In this document: piece after piece, positions 1-14,778 of the stretch
Layout of the letters: every line of letters begins with the position of its first letter
Position numbering within the stretch: the first letter of the stretch is position 1
DNA from: Magallana gigas
Taxonomy: Eukaryota
Direction: 5' to 3'
DNA: 64,000 nucleotides
Assembly: GCF_963853765.1 (NCBI RefSeq)
Contig: NC_088861.1
Location: 19,778,001-19,842,000, forward strand
Notes under the pieces: generated by a model
The model's input: the letters and a program-made list of their open reading frames with translations, nothing else
Told to the model about the DNA's origin: nothing
Database searches by the model: none
Made by a program: the position numbers and the translations under genes

Positions 1-169
1 ACATAAACAGAGCGGATCAGAAACCCTTGACTTGGGAAGATGAGTATATACATGTTGTACAATTGTACATGTAAATGCGAGCTCTTTTTAATATATTATG
101 CTTCGTTTCTACAAAAAATAGCTAAATAACTAAAAATTAACCCATATCTACATTTGTACATTGATTTGT

Positions 170-170
<1 letters not shown>

Positions 171-209
<39 letters not shown>
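171..209. repeat. (CT)n microsatellite, representative of many GA/CT tracts
   Basis: Others at ~1200-1255, 6417-6450, 7478-7530, 9714-9784, 10559-10626, 12434-12490, 35692-35770, 36724-36788, 46395-46453, 46777-46838, 61818-61880; (ATCT)n at ~21265-21308. Confidence 0.95.
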
Positions 210-8333: not shown

Positions 8334-9077
8334 CAGAACATCTGGTCGAGTCGACTTTCACACTTCCCTTGCTATTTACAAACCCATGGCCATGACAAGC
8401 ACATATAAAATGTAACCTAATTCGACACAATCTGACATTTAAGCTTAACTGTTGTAGGGGGCAGTCACATAGCGCGTTTGACAGAGATTATGTGGACTTA
8501 AATCCACGCATGCCTTATCGTAAAATACTCTTAATATTGTTATTCAGATTTTGGCACTTGATTTATATTTATATACCGAGTATTTGACTTCTGCTTACAA
8601 GTGTGTCATTTAAAGCGATTCATGAATGACATTTAAACAAACTGCATGTTATACCAATCATGATAAAAGTTTCCCCAAACAACAAACCCTTGTGCCCACC
8701 AGATTAGAGTTTGATTTTGAAATTACTGATTTATATTCTGCAGTCAGAAGTCCCTCGTAAATTTTAACTTTTCACTGTATCTTTGTATAAATAGGGAGAG
8801 TTGCCCCCTCCCCCGGTTATTATTTCATGTACTGGCGCTCTTTTTAAAATAGAATTTCAGTTATCTTTGCCATGCATATCTATATTGATAGTTTATTAAT
8901 GCAAACAATTTTACCTCCCTCTTATATATGAAATATGTAAACATGTAAGTAATTTGTAAACCTTAAGAGTAGGTCACATCTGTTCGAGATTAGTTGACGA
9001 CCGCTGGGTCTAGATTTCCTTTTTTCATGAGGTTCACAATCGAATAGTAAAAATAAAGAAGTCATTTAATTAATTAA

Positions 9078-9417
9078 GGTGGCTCACTACACCATGAAAT
9101 ATTTTCTCAGATCAGCAGAAAATTACACGGTTGTGATGGATATCATAATGGATAAGACGTAGTTAATTTGAATAGGCAAAAATTGTGCAAATTGGATGAA
9201 AAATTACATTTTTGAAAATTTAAAAAAGTAAACACGAACAAAAGCTCCAGGCGGATTCGAACTCATGATCTGCGGTTCAGAAGCCCAATACTTTAACCAC
9301 TGACCTACGACAGTATATTACCCAATCAAACGATATAAACAGTTTAACAAAACATATAAATCGCCATCTTGTGACGTAGTGTCTTGAAAAGTATAAGTCT
9401 AGGTGTAGTGAGGTACC
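9078..9417. mobile_element. TTAA-flanked MITE (Kolobok/piggyBac-type), family K1, with internal tRNA-like module
   Basis: ttaa|ggtggctcactacacc ... ggtgtagtgaggtacc|ttaa (16-bp TIR, 2 mismatches, TTAA on both sides). Confidence 0.85.
9244..9310 (-). other. tRNA-derived segment with pol III A/B-box-like motifs inside MITE K1 (not a functional tRNA)
   Basis: Minus strand GTAGGTCAGTGGTTAAAGTATTGGGCTTCTGAACCGCAGATCATGAGTTCGAATCC: A-box-like TAGGTCAGTGG and B-box GAGTTCGAATCC. No convincing acceptor stem. Confidence 0.65.
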
Positions 9418-9711
9418 TTAATTAATTAAATTCCCGTTCAGGCACTTAGCATCGTTTTTTAAATAATCTTGACCAAAACAGTTTCCAAAAATCGTCAAAA
9501 TCCTAATCTCTGTGTATGGGGGAGGGGGGGGGGGGGGGTCGCCCCCTTCTGATGCTACATGTACGTGCCTGACGTTCATGACGTTTTATTTTATGCCAAC
9601 CTGACGATCTGATATTGTATAATGTTATTCAACTAACACCGACAAACATTTTTGTACAGCGTCTCAATGAAGTCGTTTTGTTTGTTGATATTTGGCATGT
9701 CAATCAACCAC

Positions 9712-9787
<76 letters not shown>

Positions 9788-10554
9788 ACTTTTTAATTAA
9801 AATACACATACCTATAGAGGAAAAACAATTGAAACTGACGAAAGGGAAAATATCCAACATATCTTCGAATATAAATTATCATTTTTTACTTGAATATTTT
9901 ACAGGAACGAAAACAGATTTCTTACAGAGATTTATAATGAGAAATATTGACATCTTTAATGCAATTTAAAAAACCCTTCAAAAAGCTAAAATGCAATCAG
10001 AAGTCACTCGGAATGCCTTGCACAACATTTTTAACGTTATCATCCGGGTAGTTTTCACTGCAAAATTATCGTAGACTAATTTATTATTTTTTCCGTGGAT
10101 TGAAACTTGAAAACCTAGAGAAGGCGTTTCAAAGGAGAACTTTTGGAAATTGTTCATACTTTTGAATGAACATCATTTGAACCCTGAGGTATACTCATGA
10201 TTATCGAGTTATTAAACAAAATGTGAAACGAGGATAGATTGGGAAATAGTATAGTATCAATATTTTGAATAGAAGTAAAATTACAAATAGGAAAAACAGG
10301 TGCAAAGTAAACAACACTATATATAATACATACATGTATGTGAATAAAACAAGTGTAAATGCTCTGTGCAAAATCAAAAATGTGCCCTTCTGCTAGAAAA
10401 TTGTTGCTATTATACAAATTGAGTATGCTATGATTTAAAAAAAAACCTATTGAACTTTATTCCCTATGCATATGTCCGTTACATTAAAAGAGTAACATCA
10501 GATTTGTAAACTTGATTATTTAACAATCGAAGTCTTTCATTTTCAACTTATAGT

Positions 10555-10632
<78 letters not shown>

Positions 10633-10740
10633 TAAAACATCATTATATAACACCATTATTATATCTTGTATCATTTTTAGATCAGTTTTATTTCTTACTT
10701 TATAAAATCAGACAATAATTTTTTCCCTTCGATTTCAGAA

Positions 10741-12430
10741 TCAGTTGATTCTCAATACTGTAGCGTGAGCACAGAAATGGCCGAGTCCGTGACTCAACAG
10801 GCTGAGTTCCTGAGCGGAGAAATGCACAAAGCTTCCATGGGAGTCCACCAGATCTATCATTGTTTTCTTTTATAAAAAATTAAAACAGATTAAAACAACT
10901 TAATTATATACACAACTTATTGATAAAGGAGTAAATATAGAGTAAGAATATATAGGTGTTATTATATAAATAGTGCCTGTTTGGGAGGGTAACAGTTGAA
11001 ATTGACACCCCGAGAAAACCATTGTCAACCGACGCGAAGCGGAGGTTGACAATGGTTTTCGAGGGATGTCAATTTCAACTGTTATCCTCCCAAACAGGCA
11101 CTATTTAATTTGTTATACTGAATGTCTTAATTTTGAAGAAAATTTTATTGCTTTTATATAGGAATAACGTGAATTCTACAGCGAACCGTACGCGCATAAT
11201 TTTCGCGCATGTAACAATTTTTAATGTTACCCGTTGCTAAGTGCGTTGCTAACGCTGAGGGTAATAGAACGGATTATGAACTGCGTCTTAACCAATCAGA
11301 TTTCAGTATTTAACATGAAAGTATAACAAAACGTAATATTTGATGCTGCAGAATGTAGAGTGCAAGATATCAGAATATTTTATCATGATTACAAACATTC
11401 CTCTATATATTTATACATGCTTGACACAGAATTTAAGTTATGTTATTAAGAGAAAAATAAAATAAACCGTGTAAAATACTTAATATGTCTAAAGTTATTG
11501 GAATCATTTTTCTGAAGATGATTTTTTAAAAAGATTTTTACCTCAATTGCGTGCAGACCCATGGACGTGTGCACGCTGTGTTGTTGATGAGCCGTCAGCA
11601 CGTACAGATAACAATGGCCGTGAGTCTTCAACGCCATAATGTGCTGTGAATTGTGGGAAATTAAAAATGTATTTACAGGTACAAGCTTATCTTTTAAAAA
11701 GGTTGGTATTGTTTATTCCAAGAACCATACGATTCATAGGTTTAACATATATACATCAGTGAACAAACATATGAAAACATTTTTAAAAAAGAAAAAAAAA
11801 GAAGAAAAAAAGAAAGACCATCATTATGATTGGTGTGCTAGCGCTGTAGCCATCATCAAACACAAAATAGATTTTTAAACCATTGGTTTAATTTTCTTAC
11901 TTATTTAATTTATTTATTGATAGGAGGGCACAGTGGTGTATTGAAACTGTGTTGGGGGTGGGGTAGGGGTTTCAATTTAAAATTGCAAATATAAACGAGC
12001 TTCACATCCACAATGGCATAGCTCATTCACTGTGCTTAATCATTCTGTATCCACTGAAACAATTTTGATGTGTAAATTTTCAAGATCAGGTACTGTTTTG
12101 TAGCAATCAAATCTTCTCGGGCCTTTCCGGCGAGCTCGAAAAATATTTTTTTCTGAGCTTGAAGGTAGTAAAGAGAGAGCTAGCTATTGTTGTAATTTTA
12201 GAAATTATAACTTGGCATTATAAGACCTAAGCCAATGAACATTACTTTTTGATATTCACAATTAATCCAAAAACGTAATGATCAAATCATGTGTAGATGA
12301 TAAAACAAACTTCACATGGTACAGTTTATCTACAGTAGAATAGTATACCCAGAATCCCCTACCATGAAGTCGAGCATGCGTATTCCAGTAAAAAAGACTA
12401 GCGTAGTTGCTAGCGCTCTCGAGCGCTAGC

Positions 12431-12496
<66 letters not shown>

Positions 12497-12709
12497 AATT
12501 TACTGTTTCAGCATCGTAGTGGAAAGACAATCCCTCATTAATGCCATGGTGTGGGTGGTGAGTTGTTGTAGAAACTGTCTAAATTTTTATGAAAAAAATC
12601 CATTTAAATAATTGATAACGTGAACCCAGAACGAGAATCATCATGATTAAAGAAATGTTAGACTTACCGTTTGAACAATACTAACTAGGACAAGCAATAT
12701 TGACAACAT
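10741..12709 (-). CDS. Small secreted histidine-rich protein, 114 aa, 4 coding exons (uncharacterised)
   Basis: join(12668-12709,12504-12578,11542-11643,10741-10866) = 345 nt, all phase 0. Donors GTAAGT, GTAAAT, GTAAAA. Protein MLSILLVLVSIVQTTVSTTTHHPHHGINEGLSFHYDAETHIMALKTHGHCYLYVLTAHQQHSVHTSMGLHAIEKTMIDLVDSHGSFVHFSAQELSLLSHGLGHFCAHATVLRIN. Hydrophobic N-terminus; AATAAA at 10687-10692 about 50 nt after the stop. Confidence 0.8.
10968..11328. mobile_element. Hairpin-terminal interspersed repeat (139-bp palindrome 10968-11106 plus tail); Crypton-like assignment tentative; in intron 3 of the His-rich gene
   Basis: Near-perfect inverted repeat aaatagtgcctgtttgggagg...cctcccaaacaggcactattt with GCGAAGC at the apex, followed by a CpG-rich tail. 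The tail boundary is approximate. Confidence 0.7.
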
Positions 12710-14091
12710 TTTCTGGTTACGTGTTTCAGGACAGGTTTTCTGTCTTATCAGTCAAGCATATGCCAAGATAAACCTTTGACCATTGTTCCTACATATTCCT
12801 TTCAGACACTAGCTTGATTTAGGTATTAAAAATGTTTGATTGTTGTAATTGAGAATGGTACATTAATTAATATATTATTACTTTTGTTTTATAACTTTGC
12901 GTCAAAAAAAACCCCAACATTTGATGATTGGCAGCAATATGAGCGGTCGTCGGCATGAGGCGGTGACATACTGGGCAAAAGGGCGAGCCTTGTGGCCACA
13001 CAAGCATCTAATTAGAAGTGCAAGTGATTGTTATTAGCCTCTGTTGCATTTTAAATCTAATTTTCGTTCAATAATAAAGTGGACACTTGACATTTTCCCA
13101 TTTTTGTGTTTGCACCCATTACTTATCTTAATATAATGAACCGAGTCTGTGTCTGTACATTGGCTGATTGTCCCATTGATCAACATGAACAATTCATTCA
13201 TGCAACCCGTGCATACATTGATTCGCCGCGTATAAAAAAATCGAATTAAATGAGATAATTCATAATTTTAAAAAAAGAGAGAAGAAAATCGTAAGATATG
13301 GCAGACATTCTGTGCTTAATAACAAGTATTTTGTCGAAAATATTTAGACAGAGTTTATTTACACCTTTGCTTACATTTATATTCCTAACTAATTTACACC
13401 ATTGCTTAGATACTCACCACTCTAACTACTTGTTTGTTTGTTGTTGTTGTTTTTTTTTTGTTTACAGCGAACTAACACCAATGCCAAGAAATATAAACTG
13501 ACAAGCTTGCTTGCTCCCATGCAACATAGATACACCCACTTACATACAACCATATACATGTACATACAACCATAATCTTATACCTTAATTTGGTTTACAA
13601 GTTTAGCTTACTAATACAATTCTAACATAATATACTTGTTAAGCTCAATCTAATCAAAACTAGACATGTAAAAGTTCGCTATCGCAGACGAGCAGTTTTA
13701 ACAGTCTAATTTTAATTATATTGGTAACAGCTTAAATTTACTTGCATCCATTTCTACAACCATGTACCACTTGCATAATTGTGAACATGTTGCATCTACG
13801 TAATCAAAAACTTAAAATAGGACTGATATCTTGTTTTGGATCGCGTCTTTGGCGCAAGTAACGTTTGTTAATCAATGGTATCAAATGTCATCTATATTTC
13901 TCGCTATTTTTAATCACATTTTTGTCTTCAAATTTTTTTTATATACGTGTACCAAGTAAAATTCCCATGTCACGGAGTCTGTGAATATTCACGCCTGTTT
14001 TATGTAACCGAACTTCACTTTTAATCTGTTTTGATATTAAACGCCGTATGTTGCAACTACCTGCAACTGAACAGATCAGAAATAAACATCA

Positions 14092-14778
14092 TTTTTGGGA
14101 GTTGATTTTTAATCAACTCTCCTATGCAGTCACTCTGGCAAACCGAAACTGAAACAGTGTTTGGACCTAAGCATAAATCATCACCGCTGACAAGATTTAG
14201 TTCTTGAAAATAATCCATAAATTCGATGTAATGTATCTTGAAGCATTGTGTTTTAAGAAATTTATTTATGAACACCTTGAAAATAGTCAGATGTTAAATA
14301 GTACGAACAATTTAGATATTTTTTGCAGTCGTATGTAATCATACGCCAGAGTTCAATATAGTCTCGTTCAACAATCGGCTGTCTCCGTAAACCTCCGACA
14401 AGCAGAGAGTCATTCTATTTTTAGAGGTTGCGTCATCAAGCTATCACGTGACCTGGTGTACACATTCTCTTGCTTGTGGGAGAGCCGAGCATCTGGTTGA
14501 ACGAGACTAGAGTTCATTATTACTTGGATCCATACAATTTTTGGAATATTTCGATTACTAATACATAGTTTGATGGAATCAATTCTATCTTTAATTATTA
14601 CACAACGCAATTCATACGGGGTTTTCTCGAAATTCTTGTCGGAAAAGTCCAAGAATTCATATTATAAAAATTTGCGTAACTCAAACACAGGTTATAAATT
14701 ACTTGCCAAGCAAAGTAACATATTGTTATAATCGACATACTAGTAATCAACTCCCGTCAGTACTTCAGTACTTTGATT
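14092..14778 (+). mobile_element. Helentron-type non-autonomous element (HINE-like), family H1 copy 1
   Basis: 5' T-run + gggagttgatt + adjacent inverted copy aatcaactctcc. 3' aatcaactccc + hairpin agtact-tc-agtact + tt. Homologous to 15010-15670 and 18541-19186 with unrelated flanks. Confidence 0.65.
14359..14509. mobile_element. MITE with TAG...CTA termini and 10-bp target-site duplication, nested in H1 copy 1
   Basis: TIR tagtctcgttcaac / gttgaacgagacta. Flanks gagttcaata (14349-14358) and gagttcatta (14510-14519). Confidence 0.8.

What the first reader, a model, noticed from the sequence alone, without database searches (positions are those of the whole stretch)
10741..12709. Hidden 4-exon gene for a small secreted His-rich protein (candidate Zn/Cu-binding protein)
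Seen: four short exons (42, 75, 102, 126 nt), all phase 0, splice into an open 114-aa protein. It has a hydrophobic leader, 17 His (15%) including HHPHH and HGH, exactly two Cys (HCY, HFC) and a nearby AATAAA. The ORF track shows only one exon, as read-through. Known: His clusters bind transition metals, and oysters accumulate Zn and Cu heavily. Inference: the FHYD...IMALK...CYLY spacing plus a distal Cys recalls a minimal BRICHOS-like core. The protein may be a secreted metal-binding or chaperone-like protein of a mollusc family without a functional name.
Basis: partly seen in the sequence, partly recalled or inferred. Interest (0 to 1): 0.8.

Follow-up and report, generated by a model that had tools for sequence, protein, structure and literature searches.

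The report
Small secreted His-rich BRICHOS-like oyster protein

Summary
Observation confirmed. On the minus strand, four exons with GT-AG introns splice into a 114-aa ORF with 17 His and 2 Cys. RNA contigs from three runs of three studies carry the junctions 10866/11542 and 12578/12668. One 437-nt contig equals 59+75+102+201 nt, so it spans all four exons. It ends 21 nt past an AATAAA.

The gene is not hidden from annotation. The protein is letter-for-letter XP_065928435.1 (Magallana gigas, "uncharacterized protein").

It sits in a clade with one gene each from C. virginica, O. edulis and two Saccostrea species. The same genome holds 12 tandem paralogues on another chromosome. The wider family includes Pinctada and Mytilus and probably scallops. 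All members share a signal peptide, a Thr/His-rich linker and an ~85-aa domain.

An AlphaFold2 model is confident (block-mean pLDDT 85-94) over residues 31-114. Its best solved match among 48,161 PDB representatives is the proSP-C BRICHOS domain (Z 6.4-7.1). Predicted-structure libraries and a language-model search also lead to BRICHOS families. The family keeps a near-invariant Asp and a Cys pair.

Pfam's BRICHOS model stays below its cut-off, so I file this as a divergent BRICHOS-like family, not a certified member. Metal binding and chaperone activity remain untested. Interest is moderate.

The parts
12710..12730 (-). 5' UTR, minimum extent
   Evidence: The RNA contigs reach 59 nt (X1) and 63 nt (X2) upstream of the exon 1 donor. 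The true transcription start is not determined.
12668..12709 (-). Exon 1 CDS (42 nt): Met plus hydrophobic leader, aa 1-14
   Evidence: Donor GTAAGT. Joint 12578/12668 seen in X1, X2 and X7. The paralogues have an equivalent short leader exon.
12579..12667 (-). Intron 1 (89 nt, GT..AG)
   Evidence: Joint 'skips 89', ends CT..AC on the + strand.
12504..12578 (-). Exon 2 (75 nt): Thr/His-rich linker (TTTHHPHH) and the first strand with FHYD (Asp36)
   Evidence: The 75-nt length follows from the contig record coordinates. Conserved in the paralogues.
11644..12503 (-). Intron 2 (860 nt); holds a (GA)29 microsatellite at 12434-12491
   Evidence: The joint is inferred from the contig length sums.
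11542..11643 (-). Exon 3 (102 nt): strands 2-3 with Cys50 (HCYLY) and the start of helix 1 (VHTSxGLHAIE)
   Evidence: This is the most conserved exon of the family.
10867..11541 (-). Intron 3 (675 nt); holds a 141-bp palindromic repeat and a high-copy repeat
   Evidence: Joint 'skips 675', CT..AC, in X1, X2 and X7. Palindrome.
10741..10866 (-). Exon 4 CDS (123 nt plus TGA): rest of helix 1, strand 4, helix 2 with Cys105 (HFC), last strand
10666..10740 (-). 3' UTR, with AATAAA at 10692-10687
   Evidence: The X1 contig ends at 10666, 21 nt after the hexamer.

Best explanation
This is an expressed four-exon gene of the Pacific oyster, already in RefSeq as an uncharacterized protein. The 114-aa product has three parts. 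First, a short cleavable signal peptide; by alignment with orthologues the cut falls just before the invariant TTT, near residue 17/18 (inferred). Second, a short Thr/His-rich linker. Third, a compact ~85-aa domain with the BRICHOS fold: three strands, a helix, a strand, a helix and a last strand. The domain keeps what appear to be the three BRICHOS hallmark residues: a near-invariant Asp (D36) in the first strand, an invariant Cys (C50) in strand 3, and a near-invariant Cys (C105) at the end of the last helix. It belongs to a family specific to pteriomorph bivalves and is its single-copy, short-linker branch. The most likely mechanism is inferred, not shown. Like secreted BRICHOS proteins such as the gastrokines, it would act in the secretory pathway or outside the cell as a small chaperone that shields beta-prone or hydrophobic segments of a still unknown client. 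The many His residues (pKa about 6-6.5), together with the BRICHOS Asp (apparent pKa about 6.5 in proSP-C and Bri2, bioRxiv 10.1101/2021.12.01.470723), would make its conformation or binding depend on pH and/or transition metals. Shown: gene, splicing, expression, family, fold. Inferred: secretion, disulfide, chaperone action, metal or pH dependence.
For: Gene and splicing. Poly(A) signal. Last exon held at 70% or more of its sampled words by 5 runs on record as RNA, from 3 studies. Identity to XP_065928435.1 and near-identity to LOC117691754 / C. angulata LOC128185882. Orthologues at 58-68% identity with intact length in C. virginica, O. edulis and two Saccostrea species, forming a clade with 99/97 support. 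Twelve tandem paralogues with the same exon layout. AF2 model with block-mean pLDDT 85-94 for residues 31-114. 2YAD (proSP-C BRICHOS) is the top Foldseek PDB hit. VIA Z 7.1, rmsd 1.9 A over 64 residues. 2YAD is rank 1 of 48,161 chains in an unbiased scan (Z 6.4, 68 of 77 residues aligned), with rank 50 at only 2.8. About 25 of the top 30 Swiss-Prot model hits are BRICHOS proteins, mostly matched over their BRICHOS region. ESM Atlas shape search gives ITM2 and SP-C clusters at TM 0.60 and 0.65. The language-model search gives a GKN1 BRICHOS cluster at 0.89 with 187 shared features. Pfam BRICHOS is the most recurrent weak hit, in 6 of 21 members (best E 0.004), plus the Mytilus member at E 5e-4 and 20.6 bits. 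Conserved D36, C50 and C105. The VIA ranges (model 28-113 on chain 97-197) put D36 on proSP-C Asp105 by offset.
Against: The window's own protein gets no Pfam hit at E<=10, and no member reaches the 25-bit cut-off. A family profile finds no BRICHOS chain in PDB by sequence. hhalign against one genuine oyster BRICHOS exon gave probability 0.6%. Each single structural score is middling (Foldseek E 0.04-1, Z<8), and the tool warns that such Z values can reflect a common arrangement. No coordinates were available, so the C50-C105 disulfide and any His cluster were not checked. No signal-peptide predictor was run. There is no C-terminal client segment, so the client is unknown. No tissue, metal or infection expression data were obtained.
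Confidence: 0.72

Rival explanations
1. It is mainly a metal-binding or metal-buffering protein (Zn/Cu/Ni/Cd) of oyster secretions or haemolymph. The His residues are the functional part and the BRICHOS-like fold is only a scaffold.
For: 17 His in 114 aa. Every family member has 13-21 His. Where the linker is short, as here (4 His), the domain carries more (13, against 6-9 in most members), so total His is roughly kept. H64 is invariant and H40 and H70 are near-invariant. It is established knowledge that His clusters bind transition metals.
Against: There is no match to a known metal-binding family; Pfam Metal_resist appears in 1 of 21 members at E 0.23, which is noise. This orthologue group has the shortest His tract of the family. 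This reading is compatible with the best explanation rather than exclusive of it.
Confidence: 0.35
2. It is a precursor of a His-rich host-defence peptide. The N-terminal Thr/His-rich stretch would be released, and the BRICHOS-like domain would serve as its pro-domain chaperone. This mirrors the polychaete BRICHOS-AMP precursors (arenicin, alvinellacin) but with the order reversed.
For: Arenicin-1 and -2 precursors are among the structural hits. The sister clade is a 12-copy tandem array with long His-rich stretches, a pattern common for immune effectors. BRICHOS-AMP precursors are documented in annelids (PMC9756803).
Against: In this gene the His-rich stretch is only about 10 residues. No dibasic or other processing site lies between linker and domain. 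Known BRICHOS-AMPs are C-terminal Cys-rich hairpins, and this protein ends 9 residues after the second Cys. No infection-response data were obtained.
Confidence: 0.1
3. The fold resemblance to BRICHOS is convergent. The domain would be an unrelated small alpha/beta fold, for example like DUF1488 (2GPI), and the family a mollusc invention of unknown mechanism.
For: 2GPI scores Z 5.0, not far below 2YAD. All sequence-level BRICHOS signals are below the curated threshold.
Against: Several different lines converge on BRICHOS families and on nothing else: solved structures, three predicted-structure libraries, a language-model search and Pfam weak hits. The Asp and Cys-pair signature and the leader-linker-domain architecture also fit.
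Confidence: 0.12
4. The blocks are exons of a plus-strand gene or lncRNA, and the His-rich ORF is an antisense artefact. This was my own early rival, prompted by tttcag/GTGAGT-like signals on the + strand around 11557-11619 and 12512-12559.
For: Splice-like motifs on the + strand flank two of the blocks.
Against: All printed joints at the exon blocks have CT..AC ends, that is, minus-strand introns. The + frames are short or closed. The minus-strand protein is conserved across genera.
Confidence: 0.01

Closest known systems
BRICHOS domain of pro-surfactant protein C (PDB 2YAD; Pfam PF04089)
   Same: Best solved structural match: Z 6.4-7.1, 64-68 of 77 residues, rmsd 1.9-2.8 A. Both have a hydrophobic N-terminal segment, a linker and a BRICHOS domain at the very C-terminus. 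Both have a conserved Asp in the first strand and a Cys pair, one in a strand and one in the last helix.
   Different: 13-17% identity. The oyster family is below the Pfam cut-off. The domain is about 85 aa and lacks the long disordered loop of proSP-C. The leader is a short signal peptide, not a transmembrane client helix. It is His-rich. proSP-C is restricted to vertebrate lung, this family to bivalves.
Gastrokines (GKN1/2/3)
   Same: Small secreted proteins made of a signal peptide plus a BRICHOS domain. GKN1 is the nearest named cluster in the language-model search (0.89). GKN2 and GKN3 are among the structural hits.
   Different: Gastrokines are about 180 aa with a C-terminal extension, belong to vertebrate stomach mucosa and have no His-rich linker. 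No significant sequence similarity was found.
BRICHOS-AMP precursors of polychaetes (arenicins, alvinellacin, capitellacin, nicomicins)
   Same: BRICHOS precursors of marine lophotrochozoans. Arenicin-1 and -2 are among the fold hits.
   Different: Those carry a C-terminal Cys-rich beta-hairpin peptide after the BRICHOS domain (PMC9756803). Here nothing follows the domain, and the only extra segment is the N-terminal His/Thr linker.
His-rich metal-binding plasma proteins of bivalves (dominin and segon of oysters, PMC6530089; mussel histidine-rich glycoprotein, from my own knowledge)
   Same: Secreted bivalve proteins proposed to handle metals; high His content.
   Different: No sequence or fold relation was found here. 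Those are larger proteins of other families.

Membership tests
BRICHOS (Pfam PF04089) | Score at or above the curated Pfam gathering cut-off (25 bits) | tested here: not met
   P0002 has no family at E<=10. The best relatives score 20.6 bits at E 5e-4 (Mytilus P0008) and 13 bits over profile positions 6-85 of 91 (Pinctada P0009). Six of 21 members hit at E<=1, best 0.004.
BRICHOS (Pfam PF04089) | BRICHOS fold as in 2YAD (central beta-sheet flanked by two helices) | tested here: met
   Confident AF2 model. 2YAD is the top hit by Foldseek. VIA Z 7.1. Rank 1 of 48,161 chains. ITM2 and SP-C model clusters at TM 0.60 and 0.65. The Swiss-Prot hit list is dominated by BRICHOS proteins.
BRICHOS (Pfam PF04089) | The one conserved non-Cys residue: Asp (proSP-C D105, Bri2 D148; 97% of single BRICHOS domains, bioRxiv 10.1101/2021.12.01.470723) | tested here: met
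   D36 is invariant in A2 and near-invariant in A3 and lies at the end of strand 1. The VIA ranges 28..113 on 97..197 give D36 = D105 by offset. The residue-level alignment was not printed, so the equivalence is inferred.
BRICHOS (Pfam PF04089) | Two conserved Cys that form a disulfide | tested here: inconclusive
   C50 is invariant and C105 near-invariant; the only exception, P0035, has an aberrant C-terminus. One Cys is in a strand and the other at the end of the last helix. The disulfide geometry could not be checked because no coordinates are returned.
BRICHOS (Pfam PF04089) | Proprotein architecture: hydrophobic N-terminal segment, linker, BRICHOS, and usually a C-terminal beta-prone region | tested here: met
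   The first three parts are present in all members. The C-terminal region is absent, as in proSP-C.
Gastrokine family | Sequence membership (GKN-type BRICHOS plus C-terminal extension) | tested here: not met
   No sequence hit. Only a feature-space neighbour at 0.89. The protein ends 9 residues after the second Cys.
BRICHOS-AMP precursors | Cys-rich beta-hairpin peptide C-terminal to the BRICHOS domain | tested here: not met
   Only 2 Cys, both inside the domain, and no C-terminal extension.
His-rich metal-binding proteins (functional class) | Measured binding of Zn/Cu/Ni by His clusters | not testable with these tools
   Composition only: 17 His of 114 here and 13-21 His in all members.

The most novel reading that the evidence does not exclude
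The family would be a previously unrecognised, bivalve-specific class of minimal secreted BRICHOS proteins. In it a His-rich segment acts as a metal and/or pH switch for chaperone activity, or is itself a released Zn-dependent host-defence peptide with BRICHOS as its pro-domain. This would tie the well-known Zn/Cu handling of oysters to an anti-aggregation chaperone fold, and would add a family that Pfam-based BRICHOS censuses probably miss, since it scores below the Pfam cut-off.
Probability: 0.2. Interest if true: 0.7.

Novelty: new variant of a known kind. Interest (0 to 1): 0.45.

Why it matters
BRICHOS is studied intensively as an anti-amyloid chaperone (proSP-C, Bri2), yet only one domain has a high-resolution solved structure. 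Censuses of the family depend on domain annotation. This bivalve family scores below the Pfam cut-off, carries no precomputed Pfam domain in the database searched, and is named only "uncharacterized" (or once, automatically, "DUF732"). Such censuses have therefore probably missed it. At about 85 residues with no long loop, it is among the most compact BRICHOS-like domains, which could make it a convenient minimal model. Its constant His richness and its 12-copy tandem expansion in the oyster suggest a lineage-specific role in metal handling, pH-dependent chaperoning, or defence or matrix secretion.

Tried and rejected
- **Plus-strand gene or antisense artefact.** Rejected: the joints have CT..AC ends.
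- **Paralogues inside the window.** None found by tblastn.
- **Family profile against PDB sequences.** No BRICHOS chain; the best hit was an AAA ATPase at E 0.06, which is noise.
- **PF04089 against the whole genome in six frames.** This found only one genuine BRICHOS exon on C8 and not this locus, as expected for an exon-split, divergent domain.
- **hhalign of the family against that single C8 exon.** Probability 0.6%, uninformative. I had no referenced set of genuine BRICHOS sequences, so a proper profile-profile test was not done.
- **The look-up of encoding contigs for P0002.** Nothing on record.
- **Literature.** No paper holds the LOC or UniProt identifiers of the family. Searches on BRICHOS, gastrokine or histidine-rich together with oyster or bivalve terms gave nothing on this family. 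A histidine-rich hit in an oyster triploid paper turned out to be the unrelated HRC protein.
- **Raw poly(A) reads (X20, about 1% of the run read).** Almost no coverage of the exons, so no strand or end information came from raw reads.
- **Typing the spliced protein into a search.** Not done. The identifier P0002 was obtained by a profile of exon 3 pieces given by reference.

Full report
**1. The observation**

- Exon 1 is 12709-12668 (42 nt, starts at ATG, donor GTAAGT).
- Exon 2 is 12578-12504 (75 nt).
- Exon 3 is 11643-11542 (102 nt).
- Exon 4 is 10866-10741 (126 nt including TGA).

All exons are phase 0 and all introns are GT-AG. The product has 114 aa, 17 His (including HHPHH and HGH), two Cys (HCY and HFC) and a hydrophobic start. 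Exons 2 and 4 have 44% and 48% G+C, against 33.7% for the window. A minus-strand AATAAA lies at 10692-10687.

**2. Is it a real gene?**

I first saw good-looking splice motifs on the plus strand around two of the blocks and treated an antisense artefact as a serious rival. Laying public RNA data settled it.

Logan RNA contigs of three runs from three studies (X1, X2, X7) carry two joints. One is 10866/11542 (skips 675) and the other is 12578/12668 (skips 89). Both have CT..AC ends on the + strand, which means minus-strand GT..AG introns. Their k-mer depths are 127, 113 and 44.

The X1 contig is 437 nt, which equals 59+75+102+201. The X2 contig is 340 nt, which equals 63+75+102+100. Each therefore spans all four exons, and exon 2 must be exactly 75 nt. 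The middle joint was not among the printed rows and is inferred from these record coordinates.

The X1 contig ends at 10666, 21 nt past the AATAAA, which is the usual distance to a poly(A) site. The alternative acceptor at 10854-10855 does not appear among the printed joints. A second index search found the last exon in five runs on record as RNA, from three studies, plus several runs of guessed type. The raw poly(A) run, of which about 1% was read, gave almost no coverage, so I have no strand-specific or quantitative data.

**3. It is already annotated**

I could not refer to the spliced protein directly. I therefore built a profile of the exon 3 pieces of this gene and its paralogues and searched 1.84 billion representative proteins.

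Hit P0002 is the 114-aa model letter for letter. It is XP_065928435.1, "uncharacterized protein [Magallana gigas]". Near-identical entries are LOC117691754 (C. gigas) and LOC128185882 (C. angulata). The gene is thus hidden only from an ORF track, not from RefSeq. The window is Pacific oyster or a very close relative.

**4. The family**

- A six-frame search of the same genome with exon 4 found 12 further copies. All lie on contig C2 at 44.178-44.256 Mb, all on one strand, each with an open 41-50-aa exon.
- Fetching that region showed that every copy keeps the same layout: a short leader exon (M(M)FSAVFLISTVSV, then GTAAGA), a His-rich exon, the HCYLY exon and the HFC exon. Part of the array is a two-gene unit of about 10 kb repeated at least three times.
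- Full-length searches found orthologues of the window gene in C. virginica, Ostrea edulis, Saccostrea echinata and S. cucullata (58-68% identity). They also found further subfamilies in the same genera. All are named "uncharacterized" and none has a precomputed Pfam domain.
- Pinctada fucata (P0009) and Mytilus edulis (P0008) also have members.
- The best AlphaFold-cluster matches (E 2e-8 to 9e-6, TM 0.65-0.72) are uncharacterized proteins. From my memory of UniProt accession ranges, they belong to Mytilus galloprovincialis and the scallop Mizuhopecten; the tool prints no organism.
- Three ESM Atlas clusters of 96, 62 and 118 mollusc proteins share the shape.
- A maximum-likelihood tree puts the window gene in a clade (99/97 support) with one gene per ostreid species. 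This clade is sister (95/93) to the clade that holds the tandem-array type.

The family-wide conserved positions are F33, Y35, D36, H40, C50-Y-L-Y, Q60, V63-H64, S66, G68-L69-H70, I72-E73, I77, D81 and C105.

Every member has 13-21 His. The window's clade has the shortest linker: 4-8 His before the domain, with 4 in the window protein. It also has the most His inside the domain (10-13, against 6-9 elsewhere), so total His content is roughly kept.

**5. The fold**

AlphaFold2 with the 21-sequence alignment gives block-mean pLDDT of 85-94 for residues 31-114. The order of elements is strand 32-36, strand 41-45, strand 49-54, helices 57-62 and 66-81, strand 86-89, helices 91-97 and 99-105, and strand 109-113. 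Residues 12-28 are disordered.

| Search | Result |
|---|---|
| Foldseek against PDB | Chains of 2YAD (proSP-C BRICHOS domain) take ranks 1-5 and 8; E 0.11-1.4; TM by target 0.51-0.61 |
| VIA-align re-scoring | Z 7.1, rmsd 1.9 A over 64 residues; next entry Z 5.0 |
| VIA-align, unbiased, 48,161 PDB representatives | 2YAD rank 1 (Z 6.4, 68 of 77 residues); a second BRICHOS entry rank 3; only two chains reach Z 5; rank 50 is 2.8 |
| Swiss-Prot AlphaFold models | About 25 of the top 30 are BRICHOS proteins (BRICD5, chondromodulin, SP-C, arenicin-1/2, ITM2A/B/C, gastrokine-2), mostly matched over their BRICHOS region to query residues about 26-114 |
| ESM Atlas, by shape | After the mollusc clusters: ITM2 (TM 0.60, 98 aligned) and SP-C (TM 0.65, 96 aligned, rmsd 2.8) |
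| ESM Atlas, by language-model features | After two mollusc clusters: a GKN1 cluster (91% BRICHOS) at 0.89 with 187 shared features |

Each single score is modest. The tools warn that Z below 8 can be a common arrangement. The convergence of independent lines on one small family, and on nothing else, is what makes the case.

**6. Sequence-level membership**

- Pfam finds nothing for the window protein.
- Among relatives, BRICHOS is the most recurrent weak hit. It appears in 6 of 21 members at E<=1 (best 0.004).
- The Mytilus member scores E 5e-4 and 20.6 bits. The Pinctada member aligns over profile positions 6-85 of 91 at E 0.12.
- None reaches the 25-bit cut-off. A family profile finds no BRICHOS chain in PDB by sequence.

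[quoted passage not shown] The VIA ranges (model 28-113 on chain 97-197) place D36 on D105 by offset at the N-terminal end. By my recollection of proSP-C numbering, they place C105 on C189 by offset at the C-terminal end. I could not inspect coordinates, so the disulfide is inferred.

I therefore call this a divergent BRICHOS-like family, probably homologous, and not a Pfam-certified member.

**7. How it most likely works**

Aligned with its orthologues, the leader ends in small residues just before an invariant TTT: VYS/A, VFA/A, VLS/T, AVG/M, and TVS/T here. The hydrophobic core is only 11-13 residues. This fits a cleaved signal peptide, not the type II anchor of most BRICHOS proteins. The architecture is thus gastrokine-like at the N-terminus and proSP-C-like at the C-terminus, where nothing follows the domain.

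By analogy, the protein would be a secreted or secretory-pathway chaperone for a beta-prone client. The client is not encoded in the same chain and is unknown.

The constant His richness argues that His matters for function. A reversed BRICHOS-AMP precursor is possible for the long-linker tandem paralogues but is unlikely for this short-linker gene. None of these functions was tested.

**8. Novelty**

No paper holds the family's identifiers or describes it. The gene itself is known to annotation. The BRICHOS assignment, the family definition and the His-rich linker appear unreported in the library searched. I rate it a new variant of a known kind, of moderate interest.

Noticed in passing
G000:C2:44178309-44255783 (loci L009-L017): Tandem array of 12 same-strand paralogues of the window gene with long His-rich linkers (for example HHGHHHSHNTHVHGHH). 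Part of it is a two-gene unit of about 10 kb repeated at least three times, with identical exons 3 and 4. There are 200 N in the 100-kb stretch fetched (C2:44170001-44270000).
   Followed up: partly
window 10967-11107: A 141-bp near-perfect palindrome (90% arm complementarity), MITE-like, inside intron 3. RNA contigs cover it at depths in the thousands with 90-99% likeness, so it is a high-copy element.
   Followed up: partly
window 11130-11329: The highest RNA-contig depth of the stretch laid (12,000-40,000), with many loose ends at 11326-11331. This is a very abundant transcribed repeat (SINE-like?) in intron 3. It is not part of the mRNA.
   Followed up: no
window 10559-10626 and 12434-12491: Long dinucleotide microsatellites, (CT)34 and (GA)29 as read on the + strand, which are opposite motifs on that strand. 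The first lies just downstream of the poly(A) site. The second lies 12 nt from the exon 2 donor. Several paralogues also read through a dinucleotide repeat right after the exon 1 donor (SLSLSL).
   Followed up: no
window 11557-11619 and 12512-12559, + strand: Splice-like motifs on the opposite strand (tgcag/GTGAGT and tttcag/GTGAGT) flank the antisense of exons 3 and 2. No plus-strand joint was seen among the printed joints.
   Followed up: yes
window about 10760, minus strand (inside exon 4): UniProt A0A8W8JDC7 (P0019, 125 aa) is a predicted isoform that leaves exon 4 after ...HFCAHAT and ends in a different C-terminus. A GT follows at that point. It was not seen in the contigs printed.
   Followed up: no
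window 8930-10329 and 13930-14720: Blocks with very high RNA-contig depth and mostly 90-95% likeness on both sides of the gene. They are probably transposable-element copies and not neighbouring genes.
   Followed up: no
G000:C8:5620775-5620891 (L019:1775-1891, minus): The only hit to Pfam BRICHOS above its cut-off in the six-frame genome scan (27.3 bits, profile positions 12-50). It is an exon of a conventional oyster BRICHOS gene (…IVDYDKRSCYIMKLD…).
   Followed up: partly
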